A DNA stretch of 64,000 nucleotides. Source: Oikopleura dioica (lineage: Eukaryota; Animalia; Chordata). This document shows positions 18,956-61,741 of this stretch, one piece after another (the first letter of the stretch is position 1; every line of letters begins with the position of its first letter). Made by a program: the position numbers and the translations under genes. The notes below the pieces were generated by a model. It ran no database searches. It was not told the origin of the DNA and saw only the letters and a list, made by a program, of their open reading frames with translations. Location of the stretch: NCBI GenBank assembly GCA_907165135.1, contig OU015566.1:1-64000 (forward strand), read 5' to 3'.

Positions 18956-19174
18956 CAAATGTCAGCTTTTTTTGTTATCGAATTTGAGCGGCTAAGATAG
19001 TCGCTTATTTTCATATCTTTTGATTTTCGCTGAATCGGCTTATAAGAGAACCCTTGAATATTCATAATCCAACGCTGGATTTTCCGGTTTTTTGTTTTTA
19101 GAGAATTTATGAATTTTAAGCATGAATTATCGACGACCCAGTCAAATTCATTAAATAAAAGATACGGTGCCCAG
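18956..19174 (-). pseudogene. pol: Family E pol fragment, part 2 (end of RNase H)
   Basis: RWAPYLLFNEFDWVV...IQRWIMNIQGFSYKPIQRKSKDMKISDYLSR continues the frame of 27456-28561 once B is removed. Confidence 0.88.
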
Positions 19175-26085: not shown

Positions 26086-26135
26086 AAAAGATTGGCAAAA
26101 AAAGACGCTCGTTTTAGACCCATGGAAGGTCATAG

Positions 26136-30616: not shown

Positions 30617-31916
30617 TGATATCCTTAGGGAACAACGCCTCAAGCAATACAAAAAAATTTATTTCACGGCCAAATATTTACGTCAATTCGGTTCTACGTT
30701 GGTTTAAATTTGTCTTGTCAATTTGGTATTACCAAATTGATCCGACATTTTTCCGAAAATCATTTCACGATATTCTTCTCAAAATGAAAAGATGGTCAGT
30801 TTTTACGAGCCAGATTGACCCAAAATTGTCTTATCATCATGTCATCTCTTTACGATTTGTACTTTTATCATTGGAATGCTCATATGCTCTCATCATAATC
30901 AACGGGTCGGAAACTAATTAAGGGTTTATTCAGTCTAGGATTAATGTGTATGTACGCATACTTTGGAAAAAATCTTAATTCGTTTCTGACTATTCTAGTG
31001 CGATCTGACGTCCATTCATCAAAAATATGCAATTCGCAAAACCGCATGTTTAATCTTTTTATTGATATTTCTTATCATTGCTTTGCGATTTTAAAAGTTC
31101 GATTATTGACAGTTCATACGATTCAACTTCTACAACAAGATAGCCGTCAACACCTTCTTCAACAACAACTACTCCAACGAGCCGATAAACCGTCGTATCA
31201 TCTCGGTGCCGTGGGGTCGGACAAACTCTCTGTCAGTGCGTCCGCTTGTCGCAAACTAGCTCATCCGTAAGAGAAGATACTGTGCGAACCGCGACAGTAA
31301 CTTCCCCCGGGTATGTTCCTTGGAATTTGCTTCTTCTATGATTTCAATTTTGATAAATTTATTTTATAAAATCCTGACCAAATTTTATTCAATTTATTTG
31401 TTAAAATTTTGTACATATTCTTTTACTTTTCTCATCCCTTTTTTATATATTTCAATCTTAATTAACAGTCACTTCTACGGTCACATAGTGAGAAGTTTTA
31501 GTGGCTGTTATTATTTTCTGCTTTTTATTATGAAAAAAATTAATTTGCGTTTTATCTCGTCACGCGCGGCGCCGGCTCCAGAATCCTTTGAAAATAACTT
31601 GCTTGGCAAGTTCGACCAGCTTATCATCCGAAAAGAAATCGATCCGAAAGGATTTCCCGCTAGAAAAACCGTCAGAGAAAGCCACGGGCTCTCTTCCTTG
31701 TTTTCAAAAGAAAAATTGTTTTTCAAAAACAACCGCTTGTTCAAAAACACTGATTGAATCTCGCTGCTATTTAACCCCGCGTCGCGCCTTTTTCCGGCAT
31801 TCAAATCACAAATAAAACCACGCAAATTTCAAATTTGATTCTCGATATTTTCGCTTGGCATTCTAGAGTAAGAGATTAGAGAGCAAAATTCCTGCAGGAC
31901 AGCCGCTTCCGTATCA
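30617..31916 (+). repeat. 5' LTR of A2
   Basis: TGATATCC...GTATCA followed by PBS. Confidence 0.95.
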
Positions 31917-33025
31917 TGGTGACTCCAACTCCTGAAGAGGTACTGTACAAGAGTCATGCGCTTTTTTCGGTTTCCCCAAATCAGATGATTAGATTAGGAA
32001 TGAGAAATTTCGAATTTCATTTGATTAACTCTACAATCAAAGACAAATTACAGCGAGCAAAATGGATTTTTGAAAAATCTCTCGCGGAAAATAAACCCGA
32101 AAACAAAGAGGACCTCGAGGCTCAATTTTCGCGCCTTTCAAGTTCTTTTGTTTATAATTCATGCGAGCCAGAATTTCTTAGGGAATACGGGGAAGATCTT
32201 TATGGATTTGAATCAGCTGAGGAAAAATTGTCTTTTTTGACTTCTGTTTTTGGCGACGAATCGCCCGAGGAAAAGATCCTTCGAAACAAAGAGAAAATGG
32301 AAAATCTCGCTCGTATGAGCGAGAATAATGAAAAGTTCGAGATTTTTTTGTCACGTGTCAAAACGGTCGCGGAGAAGATTACGCAGAAACCAGATGCGAG
32401 AGAATACATTATCGACGCGCAATTTAGAAAATCGCTAACGCCCGAACTGCAGAATTTTCTTCGCGATCAGTGTATGCTTGAAAAAACCCCCGAGGAAATA
32501 TCCAAATTTCTTGACAAAAGAAAACGAAATGAGACTGTCCCCAAAATTGCCCAAATCGAGATTGACGCGAAACTGGGCTCGTTTTTCCAGTCGACTTCTG
32601 ACTTAATTTCGAAATCGACAATGTCCTTTGAGGATCAAATTGCTCAATTGAAAATTGAACAGAAAAAATCAGAAGAGGCGGCGGAAAAACGGGCATGTGC
32701 GCTACATGATCAAATTGAAAAACTAACGGCAACAATTGCAAAATTGGAAGTTGATCGCCGAAACGATCAGAGTTTGACGCGCCAAAATAACCAGCAACGG
32801 AATTTTCAAAGTCGAAATTTGGGCGCGCCAAACTCAGATCGGCAAAGGCCACGACGATTTTGTGGATTTTGTAACACAGACACTCATTTTAGATCGCATT
32901 GCCCCTTTATAACCTGTCATTTTTGTCAGAAAAAAGGCCACATGAAAACGGCCTGTCCCGATAATCCCGATAGAATTTACAGAGCTGCTCGGGTCGAGGG
33001 AGAAGAAACTTCAAAAAACGAGTAA
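31916..33025 (+). CDS. gag: Gag of A2, 369 aa, intact, two CCHC knuckles
   Basis: CGFCNTDTHFRSHC and CHFCQKKGHMKTAC. Confidence 0.95.
   Translation: MVTPTPEEVLYKSHALFSVSPNQMIRLGMRNFEFHLINSTIKDKLQRAKWIFEKSLAENKPENKEDLEAQFSRLSSSFVYNSCEPEFLREYGEDLYGFESAEEKLSFLTSVFGDESPEEKILRNKEKMENLARMSENNEKFEIFLSRVKTVAEKITQKPDAREYIIDAQFRKSLTPELQNFLRDQCMLEKTPEEISKFLDKRKRNETVPKIAQIEIDAKLGSFFQSTSDLISKSTMSFEDQIAQLKIEQKKSEEAAEKRACALHDQIEKLTATIAKLEVDRRNDQSLTRQNNQQRNFQSRNLGAPNSDRQRPRRFCGFCNTDTHFRSHCPFITCHFCQKKGHMKTACPDNPDRIYRAARVEGEETSKNE
33013..33019 (+). promoter_or_regulatory. -1 ribosomal frameshift slippery heptamer A AAA AAC at the gag-pol junction
   Basis: In the gag frame (tcA AAA AAC gag taa); the -1 frame is open into the protease; same heptamer at 21605-21611 and 47135-47141 (-). 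Confidence 0.75.
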
Positions 33026-36000
33026 ATAGAACTGAAAGCCCTGGTCAGGCACCAGTTCCAAGAACTTGTTCAATTTTTCGCATTGGATTACAATATTTTG
33101 TAGAAATGACAATTTTTTCAAAGAAAATAAAAATGCTCGTCGATTCAGGTTCCCAACTTAATCTTTTGCCCAAATCATTTATTCCCGATAATGTTAAAAT
33201 TCAAGCCCCTGATATTTTTGCTAAAAATTATGGTGGAGGAAGTATTGAAATTCTTGGTTTTGTTGAATGTGATTTTCATGTTAAAACGGAAAAATGGGGT
33301 AAATCACGATTTTACATTGTAAATGACAATTGTGAGGCGATTCTCGGTTCGGAAGCACTCAAATCTAATGAATTAATGATTAATCTTCATCGTAATCGTC
33401 TTGTTAAATCTGGTCCTATCGAGCGAATGGCGAATTTATGTAATAATTCATCAAAAAGCCCAAAAATTAATAACATTGAGCATGACAGTTTTTATGCCGT
33501 TTCTGAACAAAATTTCACATTCAGAGGCAAAAGTGAGCAAATAATCGATTTGAAAATTCCTCATTTGAATAGATCAATGAATCTTTTTTTAGAAAAAAGT
33601 CAGCTTAGAAATTCCAAGCTCGAATTAATAGAATCATTTCAAAGAGTTGATCCAGAAAATCCATTTTTTCGAGTTCTTGTCATAAACCCTCTTAATTCGA
33701 CAATAAAAATTCCCGCTGGCACGGCCTTCGCAAAACTTGCAGAAATAGCTGAAATCGCGTGCATAAAGCCCTCTAAAAGGATCTTGATTTTCTTCTTTCA
33801 CGATTAAAAATAGGCAATTTATCGGAGAGCAATAAGCCAAGATTTTTCGATCTTCTCGGCATTTATACTCATTTGTTTCAAGACGAGGACGACGATTTGC
33901 CTGTCTCGAACCTTGAAAAATTTTCGATTGAACTTGAGACTGATCGCCCGATTTGTAGCAATATGTACAGAACGCCGTATGCCTTGCGGGGAGTAATGAC
34001 CGGTACTCTTACCTCCTACCTTGGGCAAGACATAATAATGCGAGTAAATTCACCCTATAATAGCCCCGCGTTACTCGTAAGAAAACGAAATGGTACATTC
34101 AGATTGTGTATAGATTACAGGAAATTAAATTCATTCACGCTTCAGCAGCATCACCCGCTGCAACAAATTGAGGACGTTTTAGGATTTTTAGAGAATAGCC
34201 TTATTTTTTCTTGCGTGGATTTGCGTAAAGGATTTCATCAGTGCCTCGTGGATGAGAAATCGCGAGAAAAACTAGCTTTTTCGACTGAAGACGGACAATT
34301 TACTTGGAAAAGACTTCCAATGGGTCTTAAAAATGCCCCTATTCATTTCGCAAAATGTATGGATGTTATTTTACGAGACACGCCAAAAACTCAAATTTGC
34401 GCATATCTTGATGATTTAGTGGTCCATTCAAGAACAGAAGAAGAACACCTAGCCAATTTATGTAAATTTTTCAAATTTTAGATCAAAATAATTTACGAAT
34501 TAATATTGACAAAGCGAGTTTCTTTGAGCGAAAAGCATGCATTTTGGGTTTTGAAATTTTTAACGGGAGAATACGGCCATCACAGGACAAGATCGAGGCG
34601 GTTAAAAATCTTTCTATTCCAAGAAATCGTGAGGAGGCACAATCACTTTTTGGCCTTCTTTCGCAGCACAGAAAATTTATTAAAAATTTTGCACCCCTGG
34701 GAGTAGAAATTTCAAAAACGTACAGAGGTTCATTTTGTTGGACAAAAGAGGCGACAATTGCACTCGAAAAGCTCAAAAGTATCATCTGCCAAAACACCCT
34801 TGAGCTCAAAATCCCCCCACTAAATAACGGTGTTTTTGTACTTGAGACTGACGCATCTAATCATAGTCTCGGTGGAGTTCTTTATCTTTGCGCGGAGCGG
34901 AATAAAAATCACCATCATTCGCATAACTGCTTGCAACCGATAGCTTATCACTCGCTTAATTTCACGCCGGCACAACAGAAATACGGAACATTGGAAAAAG
35001 AGCTTTATAGTGGAAAAACATGTATGGAACGATGGAGGGCTTATCTTGCTTATGTCGATTTTCTTTGGATTACTGATAATTCTTGTGTGAAATACGCTCA
35101 ATCCTTTAAGACAAGTAATTTAAAAATTCAAAGATGGTTTACGGAGCTTCAGGGCTTTTCATTTCGAATTGAACAAAGAAAAACTCATCAGATGAAAATA
35201 AGTGATTGCCTTAGTCGTAATACATTAAATTGTTCAATCAATCAAATTAGGTTCACCCCTGAATCATTTGTAGAATTCCAAAAATCTGACCGAGTATTAT
35301 CACAAGTTAGACGTTTCGTTAGTATTGATAGATGGCCAAATAACCCACCAAGTGAGCTTTACCCATTCTTTTTACGTAGACCTGACCTTGAAATCCTTGA
35401 GACCGGGGAACTAGCTATAAACTCTCCAGCCCATCAAAAAAGATTTTGCGTCCCCGAGGCATTGACAGAAACAATTTGCAGCGAATATCATGATCACTCT
35501 CATTTTGGAATCGATATTACAGCCGAAAAAATTTCTAGAAAGTATTTTTGGCCGGGATTAAAAAATACAGTCGCGAGCTTTATCAAATCATGTCACAAAT
35601 GTCAAATTTCAAAACCAAATCTACAACCAAATAAACCCCCTTTAGGTAAATCTGAAACACCAAGCGGCCCATTTGAAATTTTGTACTTCGATTTGATCGG
35701 CCCACTTCAAGAAACTGATTTTGGTCATAAATATGTAATGGTGGTTATTGACGGTTTCAGCAAGAAAGTTTATGCGGAGCCCTTGTCTTCTAAAAAATCG
35801 GATCATTTACTGCAGAAATTCCGTAGCGTATTATTTAGAAATCCTAAATTTCCAAAATATATGGTTTTAGATAACGCGAAGGAACACGTTTTGATTGAAA
35901 AATTTTTGAAAGAAAATAAAATTGGTGTGCATTATATTCCCCCGCGTCATCCCCAATCTAACGGGCAAGTTGAAAACGTCAATCGAACCATAAAAGCCAG

Positions 36001-37477
36001 GCTCAGGGCTCGTTCAAACTGGGTGAATTGGGATATTTTTCTGTTTGAAATTGTTCATGAAATAAACAGTAGTTTACATACAGTGCTCGGAACAACCCCA
36101 TTTTGTGTAGAAACTGGTGTAAAAATCAGTCATCATTTTCAAGACCCTTATTGGCGAACATACGGAGATAAAATCGACGTTGACTTTGAGAAAATTCGTG
36201 CGAAAATTGAACAAGAAAAGCAAAAAAGAATGATCAAATTTGATAATCCCCGTTTCAAAGAATATGATTTAGGCGATAAAGTTCTTATAAAAAATTTCCG
36301 CGAAAAATTCCCTCCCTTTTTGGGTCCCTATGAAGTAACGTTTAAATCCCCGAGTGGTCTATGGTACACTGTTAAAAATGATAAGGACGAATTTAGGCGA
36401 CATGCAGAGCATATAAAAAGCTATTCTGAACGAAATTCAATTTTAGAGACGAATAATAATGTTGTAAAATACCCGAAGACTGTGACAAAACCACAAGAAA
36501 ATGATCTCGAGCTTTTTGAAATTTTTTCTGAAAACTGTCTTTTTTCGAAGGATTCCCTCGGTCGGTTTGATGAAGATTTCTCTACAGAAAAAGAATCGGA
36601 AAAAGCGCATGAACCTTTATCCTCTGAAATGTCAGATCAGTCATTACAATCGGAACCTTATCGGGAGCGGTCTAGTTCTTCTTTAGAACCAGAAAATGTT
36701 TCATCCTCTTCGACTCTTTTGATAGAAATGCCATTACCGAAAATTTATCGTAATCAAGAACCTGATTTGAATCAAGTAGGAAATGGATCAGATATTGTGC
36801 TTGATTCCGAGAAATCAAGTTCTGATTCTGAGCTTTCTGTTAATTTGACATCGTATGATAAATTGCCCGAAATTGATCCGCTAGTTGCTCTAAAACGAAG
36901 AAGGGAAAGATCTGATGATTCCGTTGTCGAGCGTAAAATTGCTAAATTTACAGTGGAAAATAATTTGGAAAACATGTCAATTTTAATTAAAATGGAAAAT
37001 CATGATCTTGACTTTTTTGAACATCTAAATGATAAATGGAAAAATACAGACGACATAGAGGAGACTTATGTTGAAAATGGTATATTTATCAAACTAAACG
37101 AATTAACAAGAGACTCACTTTTATTTATTCTTTTTAAAATGAATCAGGACTTTGATCTTGAGGAATCAAGGGCGAAACTTCAGATAAAAGTGAAGGAAAC
37201 TATTCGTAGAGAATATCCGAATTGGCGTAAATCGAGAAACGGACAACTTCTTTTTTTTGCGGTCTTTAGAGTGCAAAAAGAGCGAACGTTGTACGAACTA
37301 ACTGTCCCCGAGCTAAAGACTGTTTGCGCTTTTTATGATTTACCCTGTAAGTTTAAAAACTGCTCCAAGACAATCTTACAGGCATCTATCGAAACAGAAT
37401 TGCTGAAAAAATTTCCAAATCATCCGATGCGAAAAAATGTTCTTGTTTTTCTTCCTGACTTTGAAACTGAAATATGA
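33013..37477 (+). CDS. pol: Pol of A2 (PR VDSG, RT YLDD, RNase H, IN HHCC/DDE/GPY, acidic linker, tandem HEH-like tail)
   Basis: ORFs 33106-33807, 33873-34481 and 34544-37477; integrase and tail are in one frame. Confidence 0.94.
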
Positions 37478-37526
37478 AAAAGAAAGGCAAAAAAGATGCT
37501 CGTTTGCGACCCATGGAAGGTCACAG

Positions 37527-38825
37527 TGATATCCTTAGGGAACAACGCCTCAAGCAATACAAAAAATTTATTTCACGGCCAAATATTTACGTCAATTCGG
37601 TTCTTCGTTGGTTTAAATTTGTCTTGTCAACTTGGTATTACCAAATTGATCCGACATTTTTCCGAAAATCATTTCACGATATTCTTCTCAAAATGAAAAG
37701 ATGGTCAGTTTTTACGAGCCAGATTGACCCAAAATTGTCTTATCATCATGTCATCTCTTTACGATTTGTACTTTTATCATTGAAATGCTCATATGCTCTC
37801 ATCATAATCAACGGGTCGGAAACTAATTAAGGGTTTATTCAGTCTAGGATTAATGTGTATGTACGCATACTTTGGAAAAAATCTTAATTCGTTTCTGACT
37901 ATTCTAGTGCGATCTGACGTCCATTCATCAAAAATATGCAATTCGCAAAACCGCATGTTTAATCTATTTATTGATATTTCTTATCATTGCTTTGCGATTT
38001 TAAAAGTTCGATTATTGACAGTTCATACGATTCAACTTCTACAACAAGATAGCCGTCAACACCTTCTTCAACAACAACTACTCCAACGAGCCGATAAACC
38101 GTCGTATCATCTCGGTGCCGTGGGGTCGGACAAACTCTCTGTCAGTGCGTCCGCTTGTCGCAAACTAGCTCATCCGTAAGAGAAGATACTGTGCGAACCG
38201 CGACAGTAACTTCCCCCGGGTATGTTCCTTGGAATTTGTTTCTTCTATGATTTCAATTTTGATAAATTTATTTTATAAAATCCTGACCAAATTTTATTCA
38301 ATTTATTTGTTAAAATTTTGTACATATTCTTTTACTTTTCTCATCCCTTTTTTATATATTTCAATCTTAATTAACAGTCACTTCTACGGTCACATAGTGA
38401 GAAGTTTTAGTGGCTGTTATTATTTTCTGCTTTTTATTATGAAAAAAATTAATTTGCGTTTTATCTCGTCACGCGCGGCGCCGGCTCCAGAATCCTTTGA
38501 AAATAACTTGCTTGGCAAGTTCGACCAGCTTATCATCCGAAAAGAAATCGATCCGAAAGGATTTCCCGCTAGAAAAACCGTCAGAGAAAGCCACGGGCTC
38601 TCTTCCTTGTTTTCAAAAGAAAAATTGTTTTTCAAAAACAACCGCTTGTTCAAAAACACTGATTGAATCTCGCTGCTATTTAACCCCGCGTCGCGCCTTT
38701 TTCCGGCATTCAAATCACAAATAAAACCACGCAAATTTCAAATTTGATTCTCGATATTTTCGCTTGGCATTCTAGAGTAAGAGATTAGAGAGCAAAATTC
38801 CTGCAGGACAGCCGCTTCCGTATCA
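37527..38825 (+). repeat. 3' LTR of A2
   Basis: Direct repeat of the 5' LTR with a few SNPs. Confidence 0.95.
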
Positions 38826-39285
38826 TCTTCCGAGCGTCATTTTGGTTGATTCTGAGCCTCTCAAACCCAACAGAAAAAAAATTCAAAAAAAAAAATTTTT
38901 TTTTCGATGGTCATCGTTATCATGAATCGCCCAAAAACGAGGTCAAAATTTTGAAATTTCGTTATTTGCTCTTATTTTATTTGCAGCGTTTCTGCCGTCT
39001 TCCGAGCGTCATTTTGGTTGATTCTGAGCCTCTCAAACCCAACAGAAAAAATTCAAAAAATTTTTTCGATGGTCATCATTATCATGAATCGCCCAAAAAC
39101 GAGGTCAAAATTTTGAAATTTCGTTTTTGCCCTTATTTTATTTGCAGCGTTTCTGCCGTCTTTCGAGCGTCATTTTGGTTGATACTGAGCCTCTCAAACC
39201 CAACAGAAAAAAAATTCAAAAAAAAAATTTTTTTTTCGATGGTCATCGTTATCATGAATCGCCCAAAAACGAGGTCAAAATTTTT
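38826..39285 (-). repeat. ~170 bp satellite, array 4 (inverted)
   Basis: About 2.7 monomers in reverse complement. Confidence 0.93.
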
Positions 39286-41293: not shown

Positions 41294-41336
41294 GGGTTTG
41301 AGAGGCTCAGAATCAACCAAAATGACGCTCGGAAGA

Positions 41337-42634: not shown

Positions 42635-42682
42635 CTGTGACCTTCCATGGGTCGCAAACGAGCATCTTTTTGCCTTTCTTTT

Positions 42683-49534: not shown

Positions 49535-52500
49535 GAAGACGGCAGAAACGCTGCAAATAAAATTAGGGCAAAAAACGAAATTTCAAAATTTTGACCTCGT
49601 TTTTGGGCGATTCATGATAACGATGACCATCGAAAAAAAAATTTTTTTTTTGAATTTTTTTTCTGTTGGGTTTGAGAGGCTCAGAATCAACCAAAATGAC
49701 GCTCGGAAGACGGCAGAAACGCTGCAAATAAAATTAGAGCAAATAACGAAATTTCAAAATTTTGACCTCGTTTTTGGGCGATTCATGATAACGATGACCA
49801 TCGAAAAAAATTTTTTGAATATTTTTCTGTTGGGTTTGAGAGGCTCAGTATCAACCAAAATGACGCTCGGAAGACGGCAGAAACGCTGCAAATAAAATTA
49901 AGGCAAAAAACGAAATTTCAAAATTTTGACCTCGTTTTTGGGCGATTCATGATAACGATGACCATCGAAAAAAAAATTTATTTTTTGAATATTTTTTCTG
50001 TTGGGTTTGAGAGGCTCAGAATCAACCAAAATGACGCTCGGAAGACGGCAGAAACGCTGCAAATAAAATTAGGGCAAAAAACGAAATTTAAAAATTTTGA
50101 CCTCGTTCTTGGGCGATTCATGATAACGATGACGATCGAAAAAAATTTTTTGAATTTTTTCTGTTGGGTTTGAGAGGCTCAAGATCAACCAAAATGACGC
50201 TCGGTAGACGGCAGAAACGCTGCAAATAAAATCAGAGCAAATAACGAAATTTCAAAATTTTGACCTCGTTTTTGGGCGATTCATGATAACGATGACCATC
50301 GAAAAAAATTTTTTGAATATTTTCTCTGTTGGGTTTGAGAGGCTCAGAATCAACCAAAATGACGCTCGGAAGACGGCAGAAACGCTGCAAATAAAATTAG
50401 AGCGAAAAACGAAATTTCAAAATTTTGACCTCGTTTTTGGGCGATTCATGATAACGATGACCATCGAAAAAAAAATTTTTTTTTTTGAATTTTTTTTCTG
50501 TTGGGTTTGAGAGGCTTAGAATCAACCAAAATGACGCTCGGAAGACGGCAGAAACGCTGCAAATAAAATTTGGGCAAAAAACGAAATTTCAAAATTTTGA
50601 CCTCGTTTTTGGGCGATTCATGATAACGATGACCATCGAAAAAAAAATTTTTTTTTTGAATTTTTTTTCTGTTGGGTTTGAGAGGCTCAAGATCAACCAA
50701 AATGACGCTCGGAAGACGGCAGAAACGCTGCAAATAAAATTAGAGCAAATAACGAAATATCAAAATTTTGACCTCGTTTTTGGGCGATTCATGATAACGA
50801 TGACCATCGAAAAAAAATTTTTTGAATTTTTTCTGTTGGGTTTGAGAGGCTCAGTATCAACCAAAATGACGCTCGGAAGACGGCAGAAACGCTGCAAATA
50901 AAATTTGGGCAAAAAACGAAATTTCAAAATTTTGACCTCGTTTTTGGGCGATTCATGATAACGATGACCATCGAAAAAAAAATTTTTTTTTTGGTTTTTT
51001 TTTCTGTTTGGTTTGAGAGGCTCAGAATCAACCAAAATGACGCTCGGAAGACGGCAGAAACGCTGCAAATAAAATTAGGGCAAAAAACGAAATTTCAAAT
51101 TTTTGACCTCGTTTTTGGGCGATTCATGATAACGATGACCATCGAAAAAAAAATTTTTTTTTTTGAATTTTTTTTCTGTTGGGTTTGAGAGGCTCAGAAT
51201 CAACCAAAATGACGCTTGGAAGACGGCAGAAACGCTGCAAATAAAATTAGAGCAAATAACGAAATTTCAAAATTTTGACCTCGTTTTTGGGCGATTCATG
51301 ATAACGATGACCATCGAAAAAAAAATTTTTTTTTTTGAATATTTTTTCTGTTGGGTTTGAGAGGCTCAGTATCAACCAAAATGACGCTCGGAAGACGGCA
51401 GAAACGCTGCAAATAAAATTTGGGCAAAAAACGAAATTTCAAAATTTTGACCTCGTTTTTGGGCGATTCATGATAACGATGACCATCGAAAAAAAATTTT
51501 TTTGGTTTTCTGTTGGGTTTGAGAGGCTCAGAATCAACCAAAATGACGCTCGGAAGACGGCAAAAACGCTGCAAATAAAATTAGGGCAAAAAACGAAATT
51601 TCAAAATTTTGACCTCGTTTTTGGGCGATTCATGATAACGATGACCATCGAAAAAAAAATTTTTTTTTTGAATTTTTTTTCTGTTGGGTTTGAGAGGCTC
51701 AGTATCAACCAAAATGACGCACTAAAGACGGCAGAAACGCTGCAAATAAAATTTGGGCAAAAAACGAAATTTCAAAATTTTGACCTCGTTTTTGGGCGAT
51801 TCATGATAACGATGACCATCGAAAAAAAAATTTTTTTTTTGAATATTTTTTCTGTTGGGTTTGAGAGGCTCAGAATCAACCAAAATAACGCTCGGAAGAC
51901 GGCAGAAACGCTGCAAATAAAATTAGGGCAAAAAACGAAATTTCAAAATTTTGACCTCGTTTTTGGGCGATTCATGATAACGATGGCCATCGAAAAAAAA
52001 ATTTTTTTTTTGAATTTTTTTTCTGTTGGGTTTGAGAGGCTCAAGATCAACCAAAATGACGCTCGGAAGACGGCAGAAACGCTGCAAATAAAATTAGAGC
52101 AAATAACGAAATATCAAAATTTTGACCTCGTTTTTGGGCGATTCATGATAACGATGACCATCGAAAAAAAAATTTTTTTTTTTGAATATTTTTTCTGTTG
52201 GGTTTGAGAGGCTCAGTATCAACCAAAATGACGCTCGGAAGACGGCAGAAACGCTGCAAATAAAATTTGGGCAAAAACGAATTTTCAAAATTTTGACCTC
52301 GTTTTTGGGCGATTCATGATAACGATGACCATCGAAAAAAAAATTTTTTTTTTGGTTTTTTTTTCTGTTGGGTTTGAGAGGCTCAGAATCAACCAAAATG
52401 ACGCTCGGAAGACGGCAGAAACGCTGCAAATAAAATTAGGGCAAAAAACGAAATTTCAAAATTTTGACCTCGTTTTTGGGCGATTCATGATAACGATGAC

Positions 52501-52955
52501 CATCGAAAAAAAAATTTTTTTTTTGAATTTTTTTTCTGTTGGGTTTGAGAGGCTCAGAATCAACCAAAATGACGCTCGGAAGACGGCAGAAACGCTGCAA
52601 ATAAAATTAGAGCAAATAACGAAATTTCAAAATTTTGACCTCGTTTTTGGGCGATTCATGATAACGATGACCATCGAAAAAAAAATTTTTTTTTTTGAAT
52701 ATTTTTTCTGTTGGGTTTAAGAGGCTCAGTATCAACCAAAATGACGCTCGGAAGACGGCAGAAACGCTGCAAATAAAATTTGGGCAAAAAACGAAATTTC
52801 AAAATTTTGACCTCGTTTTTGGGCGATTCATGATAACGATGACCATCGAAAAAAAAATTTTTTTTTTTGGTTTTTTTTTCTGTTGGGTTTGAGAGGCTCA
52901 GAATCAACCAAAATGACGCTCGGAAGACGGCAGAAACGCTGCAAATAAAATTAGA
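49535..52955 (+). repeat. ~170 bp satellite, array 5
   Basis: Same unit; starts with the same variant order as 5065 onward. Confidence 0.97.
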
Positions 52956-52994
52956 ATCAGGAAGTTGTGGGTTCGGGTCCCATCGTGGTCACCA
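52956..52994 (+). other. Processed copy of the 3' half of a mature tRNA (positions ~38-76 incl. CCA; Trp-like acceptor) fused to an LTR end; not a tRNA gene
   Basis: A-TCAGG-AAGTT-GTGGG-TTCGGGT-CCCAT-CGTGGTC-A-CCA: anticodon 3' stem, variable loop, T arm, acceptor strand, CCA. Confidence 0.85.
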
Positions 52995-54197
52995 TGATAC
53001 GGAAGCGGCTGTCCTGCAAGAATTTTGCTCGATCTCTAACTCTAGAATGCCAAGCCAAAATAACGAGAATCAAATTTTAAATTTGCGTGGTTTTATTTGT
53101 GATTTGAATGACTGAAAAAGGCGCGACGCGGGGTTAAATAGCAGCGAGATTTGATCAGTGTTTTTGAACAAGCGGTTGTTTTTGAAAAACAATTTTTCTT
53201 TTGAAAACAAGGAAGAGAGCCCGTGGCTTTCTTTAGCGGTTTTCTTGCGGGAAATCCTTTCGGATCGATTTCTTTTCGGAAGACGAGCTGATCGAACTTG
53301 CCAAGCAAGTTATTTTCAAAGGTTTCGGGAGCCGGCGCCGCGCGTGACGAGATAAAACGCAAATTAATTTTTCAAAATAAAAAGCAGAAAATAATAACAG
53401 CCACTTAAACTTCTCACTATGTGACCGTAGAAGTGACTGTTAATTATGGTTGAAATAAAAAAGGATGAGAAAAGTAAAAGAATATATACAAAATTTTAAC
53501 AAATAAATTGAATAAAATTTGGTCAGGATTTTATAAAATGAATTTATCAAAATTGAAATCACAGAAGAAGCAAATTCCAAGGAACATACCCGGGGGAAGT
53601 TACTGTCGCGGTTCGCACCGTATCTTCTCTTACGGATGAGCTAATTTGCGACAAGCGGACGCCCTGACATAGAGTTTGTCCGACCCCACGGCACCGAGAT
53701 GATACGACGGTTTATCGGCTCGTTGGAGTAGTTGTTGTTGAAGAAGATGTTGACGGCTATCTTGTTGTAGAAGTTGAATCGTATGCACTGTCAATAATCG
53801 AACTTTAAAAATCGCAAAGCAATGATAAGAAATATCGATAAATAGATTAAACATGCAGTTTTGCAAATAGCATATTTTTGGATGAATTGACATCAGATTG
53901 CACTAGAAAAGTATTATGATGAGAGCATATGAGCATTCCAATGATAGAACGTATAGATCGTAAGGAGATGACATGATGATAAGACAATTTTGGGTCAATC
54001 TGGCTCGTTAAAACTGACCATCTTTTCATTTTAAGTAGAATATCGTGAAATGATTTTTGCAAATATGTCTGATCAATTTGGTGATACCAAGCTGACAAGA
54101 CAAATTTAAACTAACGTAGAACCGAATTGGCGTAAATATTTGGCCGTGAAATAAAAATTTTTTATTTGGCTTGAGGCGTTGTTCCCTAAGGATATCA
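52995..54197 (-). repeat. 3' LTR of A' (~1203 bp, ~100 bp internal deletion relative to A)
   Basis: TGATATCC...GTATCA, homologous to the A LTR with many substitutions. Confidence 0.92.
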
Positions 54198-54247
54198 CTG
54201 TGACCTTCCATGGGTCCCAAACGAGCATCTTTATCGCCCATCTTTTT

Positions 54248-57200
54248 TTATATTTCAGTTTCAAAGTCCGGAAGAAAAACAAGAACATTTTTACGCATTG
54301 GATGATTTGGAAATTTTTTAAGCAGTTCTGTTTCGATAGATGCCTGTAAAATTGTTTTTGAGCAGTTTCGAAATTTACAGGGTAAATCATAAAATGCGCA
54401 TACAGTTTTTAGCTCGGGGACAGTTAGTTCGTACAACGTTCGCTCTTTTTGCACTCTAAAGACCGCAAAAAAAAGGAGTTGTCCGTTTCTCGATTTACGC
54501 CAATTCGGATATTCTCTACGAATAGTTTCCTTCACTTTTATCTGAAGTTTTGCCCTTGATTCCTCAAGATCAAATTCCTGATTCATTTTAAAAAGAATGA
54601 ATAAAAGAGAGTCTCTTGTTAATTCGTTCAGTTTGATAAATATACCATTTTCAACATAGGTCTCCTCTATGTCGTCTGTATTTTTCCATTTATCATTAAG
54701 ATGTTCGAAAAAGTCAAGATCATGATTTTCCATTTTAATTAAAATTGACATGTTTTTAAAATTATTTTCAACTGTAAATTTAGCAATTTTACGCTCGACA
54801 ACGGAATCATCAGATCTTTCCCTTCTACGTTTTAAAGCAACTAGCGGATCAATTTCGGGCAATTTATCGTACGATGTCAAATTAACAGAGAGCTCAGAAT
54901 CAGAACTTGATTTCTCGGAATCAAGCACAATGTCTGATCCATTTCCTACTTGATTCAAATCACGTTCTTGATTACCATTTATATTCGGTACTGGCATTTC
55001 TATCAAAAGAGTCGATGAGGATGAAAAATTTTCTGGTTCTGAAGAAGAACTAGACCGCTCCCGATAAGGTTCCGATTGTAAAGACTGATCTGACCTTTCG
55101 GAGGAGAAAGGTTCATGCGCTTTTTCCGATTCTTTTTCTGTGGGGGAATTTTCAGCAAACCGGCCGAGGGAATCCTTCGAAAAAAGACAGTTTTCGGAAA
55201 AAAATTCAAAAAACTCGAGATCGTTCTCTTGTGGCTTTGTCACAATCTTGGAGTATTTTTCAACATCATTATTCGTCTCTAAAATTGAATTTCGCTGAGA
55301 ATAACTTTTCATATGTTCCGCATGTCGCCTAAATTCGTCCTTATCATTTTTAACAGCGTACCACAGACCACTCGGGGATTTAAACGTCACTTCATAAGGA
55401 CCTAAAAACGGAGGAAATTTTTCGCGGAAATTTTTAATAAGAACTTTATCGCCTAAATTGTATTCTTTGAAACGGGGATTTTCAAATTTGGTCATTCTTT
55501 TTTTGCTTTTCTTGTTCAATTTTCGCACGAATTTTCTCAAAGTCTACGTCGATTTTATCTCCGTATGTTCGCCAATAAGGGTCTTGAAAATGATGACTGC
55601 TTTTTATACCAGTTTCTACACAAAATGGGGTTGTTCCGAGTACTGTGTGTAAACTACTGTTTATTTCGTGAACAATTTCAAACAGAAAAATATCCCAATT
55701 CACCCAATTTGAACGAGCCCTGAGCCTGGCTTTTATGGTTCTATTGACGTTTTCAACTTGCCCGTTAGATTGGGGATGACGCGGGGGAATATAATGTACA
55801 CCAATTTTATTTTCTTTCAAAAATTTTTCAATCAGAACGTGTTCCTTCGCGTTATCTAAAACCATATATTTTGGAAATTTTGGATTTCTAAATAATACGC
55901 TCCGGAATTTTTGCAGTAAATAATCCGATTTTTTGCACGATAGGGGCTCCGCGTAAACTTTTTTGCTAAAACCGTCAATAACCACCATTATATATTTATG
56001 ACCAAAATCAGTTTCTTGAAGTGGGCCAATTAAATCAAAGTACAAAATTTCAAAAGGGCCGCTTGGTGTTTCAGATTTGCCTAAAGGAGGTTTGTTAGGC
56101 TGTAGATTTGGTTTTGAAATTTGACATTTGTGACATGATTTTATAAAGCTCGCGACTGTATTTTTTAATCCCGGCCAAAAATACTTTCTAGAAATTTTTT
56201 CGGTTGTAATATCGACTCCGAAATGAGAGTGATCATGATATTCGCTGCAAATTGTCTCTGTCAATGCCTCGGGGACGCAAAATCTTTTTTTGATAGGCTG
56301 GAGAATTTATAGCTAGCTCACCAGACCCAAGGATTTCAAGGTCAGGTCTACGTAAAAAGAATGGGTAAAGCTCGCTTGGTGGGTTATTTGGCCATCTATC
56401 AATACTAACGAAACGTCTAACTTGTGATAATACTGGGTCAGATTTTTGAAACTCTACGAATGATTCAGGGGTAAATTTTATTTGATTGATCGAACAATTT
56501 AATGTATTACGACTAAGGCAATCACTTATTTTCATTTGATGAGTTTTCCTCTGTTCAATTCGAAATGAAAAGCCCTGAAGCTCCGTAAACCATCTTTGAA
56601 TTTTTAAATTATTTGTCTTGAAGGATTGAGCGTATTTAACACAAGAGTTATCAGTAATCCAAAGAAAATCGACATAAGCAAGATAAGCCCTCCATCGTTC
56701 CATACATGTCTTCCCACTATAAAGTTCTTTTTCCAATGTCCCGTATTTCTGTTGTGCCGGCGTAAAATTAAGCGAGTGGTAAGCTATCGGTTGTAGGCAA
56801 TTATGAGAATGATGGTGATTTTTATTTCGCTCCGCGCAAAGATAAAGAACTCCACCAAAACTATGATTAGATGCGTCTGTCTCGAGTACGAAAACACCGT
56901 CATTTAGTGGGGGGATTTTGAGCTCAAGAGCGTTATGGCAGATGATACTTTTGAGCTTTTCGAGTGAAATCGTCGCCTCTTTTGTCCAACAAAATGACCC
57001 TCTGTACGTTTTTGAAATTTCTACTCCCAGGGGTGCAAAATTTTTAATAAATTTTCTGTGCTGCGAAAGAAGTCCGAAAAGTGATTGTGCCTCCTCACGG
57101 TTTCTCGGAATAGACAGATTTTTAACCGCTTCGATCTTGTCCTGTGATGGCCGTATTCTCCCTTCAAAAATTTCAAAACCCAAAATGCATGCTTTTCGCT

Positions 57201-58264
57201 CAAAAAAACTCGCTTTGTCGATGTTAATCCGTAAATTATTTTGGTCTAAAATTTGAAATAATTTACGTAAATTGGCTAAATGTTCTTCTTCCGTTCTTGA
57301 ATGGACCACTAAATCGTCAAGATAAGCGCAAATTTGAGTTTTCGGCGTGTCTCGTAAAATAACATCCATGCATTTTGCGAAATGAATAGGGGCATTTTTG
57401 AGACCCATTGGAAGCCTTTTCCAAGTAAATTGTCCGTCTTCAGTCGAAAAAGCTAGTTTTTCTCGCGATTTCTCATCTACGAGGCACTGATGAAATCCTT
57501 TTCGCAAATCAACACAAGAAAAAATAATGCTATTTTCTAAATACCCTAAAACGTCTTCAATTTGTTGCAACGGATGATGCTGCTGGAGCGTAAACGAATT
57601 TAATTTCCTGTAATCAATACATAATCTGAATGTACCATTCTTTTTCCTTACGAGTAACGCGGGGCTATTATAGGGTGAATTAATTCGCATTATCATGTCT
57701 TGCCCAAGGTAGGAGGTAGTAGTACCGGTCATTATTCCCCGCAAGGCATATGGCGTTCTGTACATATTGCTACAAATCGGGCGATCAGTCTCTAGTTCAA
57801 TCGAAAATTTTTCAAGGTTCGAAACAGGCAAATTGTCGTCCTCGTCTTGAAATAAATGGGTGTATATAGCAAGAAGACCAAAAAGTACCGGCTTATTCTT
57901 TTTCGATATATTGCCTATTTTTAACCGCGAAAGAAGAAAATTAAGATCTTTTTTTGAGGGCTTGATTTGGGCGATCTCAGCTATTTCCGCTAGTTTTGCA
58001 AAGGCCGTGCCAGCAGGAATTTTAACTGTAGAATTCAGGGGATTTATAACAAGAATACGAAAGAATGGATTCTCGGGATCAACTCTCTGGAATGATTCTA
58101 TTAACTCTAGCTTCGAATTTTTAAGCTGGCTTTCTTCTAAAAAAAGATTCATTGATCTGTTCAAATGAGGAATTTTTAAATCGATAATTTGCTCACTTTT
58201 GCCTCGAAATGTGTAAGTTTGCTCAGAAACGGCATAAAAACTGTCTTGCTCAATGTTATTCAGT
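54248..58264 (-). CDS. pol: Pol of A' (RT, RNase H, IN, HEH-like tail); protease end missing
   Basis: YLDD, VLETDAS, HDHSHFG...CHKC, VLDNAKE, PQSNGQVE. Confidence 0.9.
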
Positions 58265-60019
58265 TTGAGAGGCTCAAGATCAACCAAAATGACGCTCGGT
58301 AGACGGCAGAAACGCTGCAAATAAAATTAGAGCAAATAACGAAATTTCAAAATTTTGACCTCGTTTTTGGGCGATTCATGATAACGATGACCATCGAAAA
58401 AAAAATTTTTTTTTTTTGAATATTTTTTCTGTTGGGTTTGAGAGGCTCAGAATCAACCAAAATGACGCTCGGAAGACAACAGAAACGCTGCAAATAAAAT
58501 TAGAGCAAAAACGAATTTTCAAAATTTTGACCTCATTTTTGGGCGATTCATGATAACGATGACCATCGAAAAAAATTTTTTTGGTTTTCTGTTGGGTTTG
58601 AGAGGCTCAGAATCAACCAGAATGACGCTCGGAAGACGGAAGAAACGCTGCAAATAAAATTAGGGCAAAAAACGAAATTTAAAAATTTTGACCTCGTTTT
58701 TGGGCGATTCATGATAACGATGACCATCGAAAAAAAAATTTTTTTTTTTGAATATTTTTTCTGTTGGGTTTGAGAGGCTCAGTATCAACCAAAATGACGC
58801 TCGGAAGACGGCAGAAACGCTGCAAATAAAATTTGGGCAAAAAACGAAATTTCAAAATTTTGACCTCGTTTTTGGGCGATTCATGATAACGATGACCATC
58901 GAAAAAAAAATTTTTTTTTTGGTTTTTTTTTCTGTTGGGTTTGAGAGGCTCAGAATCAACCAAAATGACGCTCGGAAGACAGCAGAAACGCTGCAAATAA
59001 AATTAGGGCAAAAAACGAAATTTCAAAATTTTGACCTCGTTTTTGGGCGATTCATGATAACGATGACCATCGAAAAAAAAATTTTTTTTTTGAATTTTTT
59101 TTCTGTTGGGTTTGAGAGGCTCAGTATCAACCAAAATGACGCACTAAAGACGGCAGAAACGCTGCAAATAAAATTTGGGCAAAAAACGAAATTTCAAAAT
59201 TTTGACCTCGTTTTTGGGCGATTCATGATAACGATGACCATCGAAAAAAAAATTTTTTTTTTGAATATTTTTTCTGTTGGGTTTGAGAGGCTCAGAATCA
59301 ACCAAAATAACGCTCGGAAGACGGCAGAAACGCTGCAAATAAAATCAGAGCAAATAACGAAATTTCAAAATTTTGACCTCGTTTTTGGGCGATTCATGAT
59401 AACGATGACCATCGAAAAAAAAATTTTTTTTTTGAATATTTTCTCTGTTGGGTTTGAGAGGCTCAGAATCAACCAAAATGACGCTCGGAAGACGGCAGAA
59501 ACGCTGCAAATAAAATTAGAGCGAAAAACGAAATTTCAAAATTTTGACCTCGTTTTTGGGCGATTCATGATAACGATGACCATCGAAAAAAAAATTTTTT
59601 TTTTTGGTTTTTTTTTCTGTTGGGTTTGAGAGGCTCAGAATCAACCAAAATGACGCTCGGAAGACGGCAGAAACGCTGCAAATAAAATTAGGGCAAAAAA
59701 CGAAATTTAAAAATTTTGACCTCGTTCTTGGGCGATTCATGATAACGATGACCATCGAAAAAAAAATTTTTTTTTTTGAATTTTTTTTCTGTTGGGTTTT
59801 AGAGGCTCAAGATCAACCAAAATGACGCTCGGTAGACGGCAGAAACGCTGCAAATAAAATTAGAGCAAATAACGAAATTTCAAAATTTTGACCTCGTTTT
59901 TGGGCGATTCATGATAACGATGACCATCGAAAAAAAAATTTTTTTTTTGAATATTTTTTCTGTTGGGTTTGAGAGGCTCAGAATCAACCAAAATGACGCT
60001 CGGAAGACGGCAGAAACGC
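58262..60019 (+). repeat. ~170 bp satellite, array 6
   Basis: Same tandem unit. Confidence 0.96.
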
Positions 60020-61741
60020 TGATACAAAATCTCTTGTTTTGCTGATTGCAATTAAAATTTAACTAATCAAATTATTTTTCCTGCAGTAAATTTTAATCAA
60101 AATTTTTAAATTAACGGTTATTTGTTTATTCGAGGAATGAGGGAAATTTGGCGGTGAGCGAAAATGCAAAAAATATGCAGCTGCATTTTCAAAATATAAA
60201 AACAGGAGTGCACGCGCGAAAAGCATGGTTTTTCAGAATCACAAAGTTCAAAAGTTCGCCTCAGTTTTTTTCTTCCGGATAATCAATAACGACCTTTTCA
60301 GATCAAATTCTTTCGCTTGAGCCGGGTTCTCAGGCATTTTTTCATATCAGGAGACGAACAGGGAAGGGATGAACAATGTCGCAAGTGGCGGCGCCAAATT
60401 TCGAATAAATAAAATAAAGAAAGATTAATTAAAGATAAAGAAGGGTTAAATAAATAAAAAAAGCAAGTTAAAATAATCTATAATAATAATTGGCCAGTAA
60501 TTAGAATTATAAATTACAGAAAGGTTAATTATACGGAAAATTCTTTTTTCAATTTTTTATCTTTTGTTTGAGTTTTTTCGTTTCAATTTACGGTGAGAAA
60601 TAAATAAGCATAAAAAAACAGTTAAATAAAATAACGCTACGATAAAATAATATATACAGTAAAGTTTATGGTCAAAACTACTTCGGCTCACCTTGCAGTG
60701 CTTATTGACGCCTTTTGCTTTGCCTCGCTACTTTGCGTCAAGCCCTATCGTTGACAGGGAACCGCAAGATGCCAAGTATCTGCAGCTTGAAGCTTGCCAT
60801 CCGGCGCGCCCATGGGTGCCATTTGAAGTAGATTTGAAGAGTTGGCGAGGTGGTAGAACTCGCGTCCGCGCCGAGAGCAGCAGTCGAAGATTTTCCAAAT
60901 AGAACAGAAAAGGATAATACCACTAGCTTGAATTTTAGAATAAATTAACCCCCCGAACACTCAGGGATTTTACAGAACAAAATCAATTTAATTGAGGAAA
61001 GAAACGATTCAAGCTAAAAAAAGAGACGATTAAGGCTTGAGAAGAGACGTTCTAAGCTAGAGAAGAGTCGATTTAATAAAATTTTGCAATTTAAAATAAA
61101 ATTAACCCTCGAACATGCGGGGCTTTTCATGCACAACAAAGAGCGATTTGATTAATTTCAGCAATCATAAATAAAAGTTAACCCTCGAACACTTTGGTCT
61201 GGATATTAATCATAAATTTCAAATAAAGTTAACCCTCGAACACAAGGGTTTCCATGCAAACATTTTTTTCCCAAGCAATGAATGGTCAATCATGCAAATT
61301 TTAACATGAAAATTTGAAGCATTTTTAGTAAATAAATTTAGGAATCAAGCGGTTACTTTTGAAGGTGGTTCTAATTAGGTTTCGAATAATAATTGTACAG
61401 TATTTATAAGTGCACGCGTACGTACTGTTAAGCCTAGACTCTGACCGCTTAATTTTAACCCCTAACCAGAGAAAACTGAAGAGTGCGGCCGCTCGCTGGC
61501 CTTAGAGGTCTGCCGAGGTTCTAGCTCCGATGCAGACATAAAGCCGCGAGAAGACCTTTTACCATATGTGAGATGATAATTTGGACCGTGAAGAGACGTT
61601 TTTGGGCGGAAAATTCGACGCCATCTTTTCAAATTTCTAAGTGTGAATTTGGGCAGTATTTTGAAGCTTAGTTCGAGTTCAATTTTACCGTGAATATTAT
61701 CAAAAGATTTTTTTTTCAGTTGTTTCTGTAGTATTGTATCA
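60020..61741 (-). repeat. Putative 3' LTR of D (1722 bp)
   Basis: 6-bp terminal inverted repeat TGATAC/GTATCA, downstream of the pol stop; partner LTR lies outside the window. Confidence 0.8.

What the first reader, a model, noticed from the sequence alone, without database searches (positions are those of the whole stretch)
52956..52994. Reverse-transcribed mature primer tRNA frozen in the genome at the end of a truncated element
Seen: between satellite and the U5 end of the A' LTR lie 39 nt that fold as tRNA positions 38-76 with the CCA tail. The near-invariant A58 of the T loop is G (base 52976, TTCGGGT), and the copy ends at about position 38. A' lacks a 5' LTR, gag and TSD. Knowledge: RT misincorporates when reading through m1A58 and stalls at modified position 37. 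Inference: this is a tRNA-primed, incomplete minus-strand cDNA (tRNA-U5-R-U3-pol) captured without integrase, probably as a double-strand-break patch in the satellite. It identifies the primer tRNA (Trp-like acceptor GGTCA, Arg not excluded) and records tRNA modifications in genomic DNA.
Basis: partly seen in the sequence, partly recalled or inferred. Interest (0 to 1): 0.85.

Follow-up and report, generated by a model that had tools for sequence, protein, structure and literature searches.

The report
Primer tRNA copy at LTR end
A broken copy of a virus-like jumping gene sits in subtelomeric satellite DNA with a 39-41-base DNA copy of the mature arginine tRNA that primed its reverse transcription still attached, a natural relic of a failed copying reaction pasted into the chromosome without the element's own integrase.

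Summary
Bases 52956-52994 lie between the 171-bp satellite and the last U5 base of a complete, single LTR. On the minus strand that LTR follows a 5'-truncated pol. The 39 bases are positions 38-76 of a mature tRNA, including CCA.

A metagenome scan found 13 tRNA-Arg(TCG) genes that match positions 38-73 at 35 of 36 bases. The only mismatch is position 58 (A in the genes, G in the window), and none of the genes encodes CCA. So the primer is tRNA-Arg(UCG), not Trp.

One of those contigs encodes a protein 90% identical to Oikopleura dioica, so the host is probably an appendicularian and the element probably Tor-like.

Intact relatives in the window have two LTRs and 5-bp target duplications. This copy has one LTR, an internal end, a 2-nt filler and a satellite phase jump. 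That fits end-joining capture of a dead-end cDNA, as shown experimentally for yeast Ty1.

The tRNA gene has A37, and the window's two preceding bases also fit G36-A37, so a stall at a modified position 37 is not supported. G58 fits an m1A58 misreading, but a G58 tRNA variant or a later mutation is not excluded.

The parts
49535..52953 (+). Left flank: 171-bp satellite array, ending in phase at ...AAATTA
   Evidence: TRF; junction read
52954..52955 (+). Junction bases GA of ambiguous origin. They equal tRNA G36-A37 and also the satellite variant ...TAGA (30 of 73 monomers).
52956..52994 (+). DNA copy of mature tRNA-Arg(UCG) positions 38-76. It is tRNA-sense on the + strand, that is PBS polarity relative to the minus-strand element. 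CCA is at 52992-52994.
   Evidence: 35/36 identity to 13 tRNA-Arg(TCG) genes that lack an encoded CCA; Rfam tRNA hit
52976..52976 (+). G at tRNA position 58. This is the only difference from the tRNA genes, which have A.
52995..54197 (-). Complete single LTR of A' (about 1203 bp, TG...CA). It is a 3' LTR by position, since it follows pol and a PPT-like stretch. About 94% identical to the LTRs of element A, with an internal indel of about 90 bp.
54198..58260 (-). Internal region of A': pol (RT, RNase H, integrase and a C-terminal part with no Pfam hit), 5'-truncated. It corresponds to A2 42635-46685. The reading frame is split into three overlapping ORF pieces, so at least two frame changes. 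gag, PBS and 5' LTR are absent.
58261..58262 (.). Two bases (CA) that match neither the element nor the satellite: filler at the pol-side junction
58263..60021 (+). Right flank: the same satellite in the same orientation. It restarts 68 bp before the phase at which the left flank stopped.
30617..38826 (+). Reference copy A1 of the same family: two 1300-bp LTRs, 5-bp target duplication TCTTC, PBS TGGTGAC... directly after the 5' LTR and overlapping the gag start codon
41336..49536 (-). Reference copy A2, an inverted near-identical duplicate of A1 with the same flanks

Best explanation
A' is a dead-end product of reverse transcription of a Ty3/gypsy-type (probably Tor-like) element, joined into a break in the subtelomeric satellite by the host's end-joining machinery rather than by integrase.

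Minus-strand DNA was primed by mature tRNA-Arg(UCG) and extended, after the first jump, through U3 into pol. Plus-strand synthesis then copied U3-R-U5 and ran on into the primer still attached to the minus strand. It did not stop after 18 nt, before position 58, but continued to the anticodon loop (positions 36-38). The result was a linear one-LTR molecule, pol-LTR-tRNA copy.

That molecule was ligated to satellite DNA with 0-2 nt of overlap at the tRNA end and a 2-nt filler at the pol end.

Shown: the anatomy, the identity of the tRNA, the CCA, the single mismatch at position 58, and the absence of integrase marks. Inferred: the order of the steps, which polymerase read the tRNA, that a double-strand break was the entry point, and that G58 reflects m1A58.
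For: The tail abuts the terminal CA of U5 with no spacer and has PBS polarity.

It matches 13 tRNA-Arg(TCG) genes at 35/36 over positions 38-73 and carries a CCA that those genes do not encode.

The match runs 21-23 nt beyond the 18-nt PBS length. It also differs from the family's own PBS and leader, which match the tRNA for only 7-13 nt. So it was copied from the tRNA and not inherited from an element.

The family PBS (TGGTGAC..., TGGTGACC...) fits the 3' end of this tRNA.

Intact copies have two LTRs and 5-bp duplications: TCTTC for A1 and A2, CCCAG for C. A' has one LTR, an internal end at 58260, a CA filler and a 68-bp satellite phase overlap, or equivalently a deletion of 103 + n x 171 bp.

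Literature: Ty1 3' LTR fragments carrying nucleotides found only in cDNA are captured at breaks in yeast (PMC11372161). Synthesis that runs past positions 58 and 54 of the primer gives plus-strand DNA not complementary to the other strand (PMC8599865; PMC11251516). m1A causes both arrest and misincorporation (PMC4787781).
Against: This is a single case with no raw reads. The region is highly repetitive and contains about 100%-identical inverted duplicates, so the satellite-side junctions could be affected by assembly.

The host's own tRNA genes were not available, so the parent gene is inferred from metagenome contigs of a related animal.

No empty-site paralogue could be found, so the break and the size of any deletion are inferred.

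The pol-side end could be a later deletion rather than part of the original event.

Because the family PBS is short, even normal plus-strand strong-stop DNA would carry a non-complementary tail (my recollection of the Ty1 work by Lauermann and Boeke). Read-through therefore need not be what made this molecule a dead end.
Confidence: 0.8

Rival explanations
1. The anatomy is as in the best explanation, but G58 is not a modification mark. Either the primer was a rare tRNA-Arg(UCG) variant with G58, which cannot carry m1A58 and so gives no stop signal (that alone would explain the read-through). Or the primer was unmodified at A58 and the A changed to G after insertion.
For: One substitution cannot separate these origins. 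Loss of the position-58 stop is known to allow synthesis to continue into the tRNA (PMC8599865; PMC11251516). A-to-G is a common transition, and A' is old enough to have a broken pol.
Against: None of the 105 natural sequences with this T arm has G at position 58, and 101 have A. All 13 closest genes have A58. The other 35-37 comparable bases of the tail are unchanged, so a random later hit landing exactly on position 58 has a chance of about 1 in 40.
Confidence: 0.35
2. The primer was a 3' tRNA half already cut in the anticodon loop. The copy then ends at 36-38 because the template ended there, not because a polymerase stalled or the end was trimmed.
For: The end point lies in the anticodon loop, where tRNA halves are usually cut (from my own knowledge). 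The gene has A37 in a CGN-reading tRNA, for which bulky position-37 modifications are not expected (from my own knowledge). Use of a tRNA fragment as primer is known for Drosophila copia (from my own knowledge).
Against: This is a single end point lying inside a 1-2 nt overlap with the satellite. Trimming followed by a microhomology join explains it equally well.
Confidence: 0.15
3. This was an ordinary integrase-made insertion or a tandem element, later truncated. On this reading the 39 nt are the element's own PBS plus leader, cut off by satellite turnover.
For: Satellite arrays recombine often, and other element fragments in the window also end in satellite. Tandem elements that share an LTR are known for Tf1 (PMC11042837).
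Against: In all ten relatives examined the sequence after the LTR matches the tRNA for only 7-13 nt and then encodes gag. Here identity to the tRNA runs 39-41 nt, and past the first 7-8 bases the sequence bears no resemblance to the family leader.
Confidence: 0.03
4. A fragment of a tRNA gene or of a tRNA-derived SINE lies next to the LTR by chance, or the junction is an assembly chimera.
For: ARAGORN and default Rfam scans find no tRNA here, which fits a fragment. The region is repetitive and hard to assemble.
Against: The genes lack CCA whereas the tail has it exactly at the LTR edge. The orientation and register are those of a primer on U5. A chance or chimeric join reproducing that to the base is very unlikely.
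Confidence: 0.04

Closest known systems
Capture of Ty1 cDNA at chromosomal double-strand breaks in yeast (Moore and Haber 1996; Teng et al. 1996; Yu and Gabriel 1999; as summarised in PMC11372161)
   Same: The 3' LTR end of the element is the favoured captured end. Many inserts carry extra nucleotides that exist only in cDNA. Joining is by end joining, without integrase marks.
   Different: Those are induced breaks in laboratory yeast and a Ty1/copia element. This is a fixed, natural insertion of a Ty3/gypsy-type element in what is probably an animal genome. Its tRNA copy is much longer (39-41 nt) and passes position 58.
tRNA or PBS inserts at retroviral 2-LTR circle junctions, and read-through of the primer when the position-58 stop fails (PMC5618025, PMC8599865, PMC11251516; from my own knowledge, Colicelli and Goff 1986 described a cloned circle with a tRNA copy between the LTRs)
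   Same: An unprocessed U5 end is followed by primer-derived sequence, and plus-strand synthesis continues into the tRNA beyond the normal 18 nt.
   Different: Those are unintegrated or in vitro products. Here the product is in the chromosome and is joined to host satellite, not to a second LTR.
Integrase-independent insertion of Tf1 by single-strand annealing (PMC11042837)
   Same: Insertion occurs without integrase and uses the primer-derived single-stranded ends of the cDNA.
   Different: Tf1 events need homology between the target and the primer sequences, and they often land in existing elements to form tandems. Here the overlap with the target is only 0-2 nt (imperfect over about 6 nt) and the product is truncated.
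Strong-stop-DNA model for the origin of tRNA-derived SINEs (Ohshima, Okada and colleagues, 1993; from my own knowledge, not retrieved here)
   Same: A tRNA with CCA is joined to U5-like sequence and fixed in a genome.
   Different: That model concerns minus-strand strong-stop DNA that becomes a propagating family. A' is a single, non-propagating copy that includes a whole LTR and pol.
Tor elements of Oikopleura dioica (PMC4402516)
   Same: Gypsy-like LTR elements of an appendicularian with gag and pol and, in many members, a third gene. Copies are very similar to one another.
   Different: No named Tor sequence came back from the searches, so membership is inferred only from the probable host lineage and the domain order.

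Membership tests
Primer-tRNA copy on a reverse-transcription product | Abuts the last base of U5 with no spacer, in PBS polarity | tested here: met
   ...GTATCA on the element strand is followed directly by TGGTGACC...
Primer-tRNA copy on a reverse-transcription product | Carries the post-transcriptional CCA that the genes lack | tested here: met
   The tail ends in CCA. The 13 matching genes continue with AAACTT or AAATAT.
Primer-tRNA copy on a reverse-transcription product | Matches a real tRNA beyond the length of a PBS | tested here: met
   35/36 over positions 38-73 against tRNA-Arg(TCG) genes
Primer-tRNA copy on a reverse-transcription product | The family's PBS is complementary to the same tRNA | tested here: met
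   The match is short: 7 nt in A, 8 in C and 9-13 in relatives (12 of 13 in L108). The PBS overlaps the gag start codon.
Primer-tRNA copy on a reverse-transcription product | The host genome encodes that tRNA | not testable with these tools
   No host genome was available. The genes come from metagenome contigs, one of which encodes a protein 90% identical to Oikopleura dioica.
Integrase-mediated LTR element insertion | Two LTRs, both ends at TG...CA, and a 5-bp target duplication | tested here: not met
   One LTR, an internal pol end and no 5-bp duplication. A1, A2 and C do have these features.
cDNA capture by end joining at a break | Junctions with little or no homology, or with filler, and an altered target | tested here: met
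   0-2 nt overlap at the tRNA end, a CA filler at the pol end, and a satellite phase overlap of 68 bp (or a deletion of 103 + n x 171 bp)
cDNA capture by end joining at a break | A pre-existing double-strand break at the site | not testable with these tools
   No empty-site paralogue exists in the window. The arrays are homogenised at 94-96% in every register.
tRNA gene or tRNA-derived SINE | 5' half with internal promoter boxes, and a gene-type 3' end without CCA | tested here: not met
   No 5' half is present. ARAGORN finds nothing in the window, and CCA is present.
m1A58 reverse-transcription signature | A mismatch at position 58 only, with A58 in the parent | tested here: inconclusive
   The single mismatch is at position 58, and no natural G58 occurs among 105 related T arms. 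However, there is only one event, the host genes were not seen, and rival origins remain.
Tor elements of Oikopleura | Gypsy-type gag-pol in an Oikopleura genome, related to described Tor groups | tested here: inconclusive
   The domain order RT-RNase H-integrase is met. The nearest proteins are unnamed seawater-metagenome elements at 46-64% identity. No named Tor hit was returned.

The most novel reading that the evidence does not exclude
The G at 52976 is a genomic record of m1A58 in the primer, left when a polymerase read through the methylated base. Tails of this kind would then be a recoverable class of natural fossil tRNA reads at the U5 ends of dead-end LTR-element insertions. They would reveal the primer tRNA, its isodecoder and some of its modifications for elements in animals where no biochemistry exists. 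They could also show whether 3' tRNA halves serve as primers.
Probability: 0.4. Interest if true: 0.7.

Novelty: new member of a known kind. Interest (0 to 1): 0.6.

Why it matters
It identifies the primer tRNA of this element family, tRNA-Arg(UCG), directly from the genome. That is useful because the family's PBS is only 7-13 nt long and lies inside the gag start, which makes assignment from the PBS alone unsafe.

It shows that integrase-independent capture of reverse-transcription intermediates, known mainly from induced breaks in yeast and from cultured-cell work on retroviruses, also leaves fixed insertions in a natural, probably animal, genome, here in a subtelomeric satellite.

If more such tails exist, the base at position 58 and the end points along the tRNA would give a sequence-only view of primer modification and of how far polymerases run into the primer.

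Tried and rejected
1. ARAGORN on the window and a default Rfam scan of 52800-53150 found no tRNA. The tRNA model appeared only when the stretch was cut at the tail so that a 5'-truncated match was allowed.
2. Folding the 39-mer alone gave no energy signal. This is not informative for half a tRNA.
3. The Trp assignment is rejected: all the closest genes are Arg(TCG).
4. An exact look-up of the window's pol ORF in public assemblies found nothing, so no further copies from the same genome could be fetched.
5. No second tail was found. There is none in the window, none at the other element-satellite junctions, and none in ten related metagenome elements.
6. I looked for an uninterrupted paralogue of the target site in the other satellite arrays. 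All registers match at 94-96%, so none can be recognised.
7. Literature searches for a described natural genomic case returned experimental precedents only. Two searches failed on term syntax.
8. One row in alignment A1 (L017_test) used wrong coordinates and should be ignored.
9. One search returned no answer and was repeated.

Full report
**Setting.** The window is a chromosome end. (TAACCC)n runs from 1 to 2372. After it come arrays of a 171-bp satellite interrupted by LTR elements. Pfam finds RT, RNase H, the integrase zinc-binding domain and the integrase core, in that order, in the long ORFs. These are therefore Ty3/gypsy-type elements.

Element A is present in three forms:
- A1 (30617-38826, + strand).
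- A2 (41336-49536, - strand), a nearly identical inverted duplicate of A1.
- A piece next to the telomere.

A1 and A2 have 1300-bp LTRs (TG...CA) and a 5-bp target duplication, TCTTC. The related element C (19173-27455) has the duplication CCCAG.

**The observation.** A' lies on the minus strand.
- Its LTR (52995-54197) is complete and about 94% identical to the A LTRs.
- The LTR is preceded, in element sense, by the same PPT-like stretch as in A. Before that comes 4.06 kb of pol (54198-58260), which corresponds to A2 42635-46685.
- There is no gag, no PBS region and no 5' LTR.
- The pol frame is split into three overlapping ORF pieces, so it has at least two frame changes.

Directly after the last U5 base come the 39 nt at 52956-52994, and then satellite. 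Read on the + strand these 39 nt parse as tRNA positions 38-76: position 38, the 3' strand of the anticodon stem, a 5-nt variable loop, a T arm, a 7-nt acceptor strand, A73 and CCA. Position 58 (base 52976) is G. Rfam's tRNA model aligns the stretch as a 5'-cut tRNA (19.4 bits, E 0.017).

**Which tRNA.** I scanned metagenome contigs for the T arm plus acceptor strand, leaving positions 57-59 free. This returned 105 loci.
- Thirteen loci match the tail at 35 of 36 bases over positions 38-73. Twelve of these are called tRNA-Arg(TCG) by ARAGORN, and one lies at a contig edge.
- The single mismatch is position 58: A in every gene, G in the window.
- None of the genes encodes CCA.
- Among all 105 natural matches, 101 have A at position 58 and none has G.

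The primer is therefore tRNA-Arg(UCG), not a Trp-like tRNA.

The contigs that carry the gene are gene-dense and encode animal-type proteins (OATP, CUB). One encodes an endonuclease III homologue 90% identical to the Oikopleura dioica protein, with the next named hits below 60%. A relative of element A (L107) comes from the same metagenome sample as one of the tRNA contigs (L040). The nearest proteins to the A pol are unnamed elements on 4-8 kb contigs, some from seawater samples, at 46-64% identity. Identity then drops to about 30% for other animals.

The host is therefore probably an appendicularian, and the elements probably belong with the Tor elements described only in Oikopleura (PMC4402516). 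This is an inference, because no named Tor sequence was returned. I took none of the contigs for human.

**Copied from the tRNA, not inherited.** In A, C, B and seven related metagenome elements, the LTR ends in ...ATCA (mostly ...TATCA) and is followed at once by TGGTGA.... The gag ATG straddles that boundary, so the PBS is coding.

These PBS regions match the 3' end of the Arg tRNA for only 7-13 nt: 7 in A, 8 in C and 12 of 13 in L108. After that they continue as a conserved gag N-terminus. The A' tail follows the tRNA for 39-41 nt. After the first 7-8 bases it has nothing in common with the family leader.

This rules out a truncated tandem element or an ordinary PBS plus leader. It also shows that the family PBS is compatible with this primer.

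**The junctions.** On the tRNA side the satellite runs to ...AAATTAG. The next base, A at 52955, occurs at that place in 30 of 73 monomers, but 52956 never fits the satellite. The tRNA genes read G36-A37-A38 at these positions, and C35 does not match. The join therefore lies within a 0-2 nt overlap, and the copy begins at position 36, 37 or 38.

On the pol side, homology to A ends at 58260. Two bases (CA) fit neither partner, and satellite resumes at 58263.

The right flank restarts 68 bp before the phase at which the left flank stopped. The two 68-bp stretches differ at 3 positions, which is no closer than monomers in general. This is best read as a deletion of 103 + n x 171 bp, or a join between different monomers, and not as a target duplication.

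None of this is what integrase produces in this family.

**Mechanism.** The order pol-LTR-tRNA copy is that of a reverse-transcription product after the first strand transfer. In such a product, plus-strand synthesis from the PPT has copied U3-R-U5 and continued into the primer.

Normally that synthesis stops after 18 nt, before m1A58. When it does not, the product carries sequence absent from the element and is not complementary to the other strand (PMC8599865; PMC11251516).

In yeast, 3' LTR fragments of Ty1 carrying nucleotides found only in cDNA are a hotspot among DNA pieces captured at breaks (40 of 56 3' LTR inserts in PMC11372161, which cites Moore and Haber 1996 and Yu and Gabriel 1999). 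Primer-derived inserts at unprocessed U5 ends are also known from 2-LTR circle junctions (PMC5618025). Integrase-independent insertion through primer-derived single strands is known for Tf1 (PMC11042837).

A' fits this known kind. It is a dead-end, one-LTR cDNA joined to a broken satellite by end joining.

What is inferred:
- That a break was the entry point.
- Which polymerase copied the tRNA (the element's RT or a host enzyme during repair).
- Whether the pol-side end reflects an unfinished minus strand, trimming, or a later deletion.

Because the family PBS is short, even a normal strong-stop product would have a non-complementary tail (my recollection of the Ty1 work by Lauermann and Boeke). 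Read-through therefore need not be the cause of failure.

**The two modification claims.**

*Position 58.* m1A is typical of position 58 in eukaryotic tRNAs and causes both arrest and misincorporation, with G, T or C appearing in place of A (PMC4787781). A lone A-to-G at exactly this base, in an otherwise unchanged 36-38 nt, fits that well.

Two alternatives give the same sequence. One is a rare G58 variant as primer, which would lack the stop and so be strongly enriched among read-through products. The other is an unmodified primer followed by a later transition. With one event and no host tRNA catalogue, I put the m1A58 reading at roughly 0.4-0.5.

*Position 37.* The genes have A37 in a CGN-reading tRNA, where the bulky position-37 modifications are not expected (from my own knowledge). 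The window bases may include A37 and G36. A stall at a modified position 37 is therefore not supported. Trimming with a 1-2 nt microhomology join, a pause in the anticodon loop, or a 3' tRNA half as primer all remain possible.

**Novelty.** The biochemistry and the capture pathway are known. My searches returned no described natural, fixed example with a tRNA copy this long that passes position 58, but the library is incomplete. I file it as a new member of a known kind, with a more novel reading (a genomic record of primer modification) that remains open.

- Broken genes are described by counts only.
- One alignment row (L017_test) had wrong coordinates and is to be ignored.

Noticed in passing
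window 2371-5064, with telomere repeats 1-2372: A copy of element A (5' LTR, gag and the start of pol, minus strand, 99.5% identical to A2 46842-49536) is cut inside pol, and the telomere repeats begin directly at the cut. This looks like a chromosome break healed by telomere addition. The cut lies only 157 bp, in element coordinates, from the point where A' is truncated.
   Followed up: partly
window 30617-38868 and 41294-49536: A1 and A2, each with 42 bp of the same flank, form an inverted duplication at about 100% identity around a 57-bp minisatellite (39460-41283). This is either a very recent palindromic duplication or an assembly fold-back.
   Followed up: no
window 31916-31935, 20492-20510 and 8831-8850; L106-L115 at their gag starts: In this whole group of elements the gag ATG is formed by the last A of the LTR plus the TG of the PBS. 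The primer binding site is therefore coding sequence (M-V-...), which may explain why the PBS is short and imperfect.
   Followed up: partly
window 18960-19172 plus 27456-28561: A 1.3-kb internal fragment (RT and RNase H, minus strand) of another element is split by the insertion of element C (duplication CCCAG). It lies between satellite arrays of opposite orientation and has no LTR and no tRNA tail. It may be another captured fragment or a rearrangement scar.
   Followed up: partly
satellite monomer stretch GACGCTCGGAAGACGGCAGAAACGCTGCAAATAAAATTAG, e.g. window 52915-52954: Four independent element-satellite junctions fall within this roughly 40-bp part of the 171-bp monomer: the A1/A2 duplication, the LTR edge of the element at 60022, the left edge of the fragment at 18960, and the A' tail. 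This suggests a preferred or fragile site.
   Followed up: no
window 54248-55537 (minus strand) and the matching C-terminal half of ORF 34544-37474: About 430-490 residues downstream of the integrase core have no Pfam match. In Oikopleura Tor elements a third, envelope-like gene sits at this place. I did not examine this further.
   Followed up: no
window 8833-8851: The PBS of element B resembles the Arg tRNA 3' end with two bases missing. The same primer family therefore seems to be used across at least three element families in the window.
   Followed up: partly
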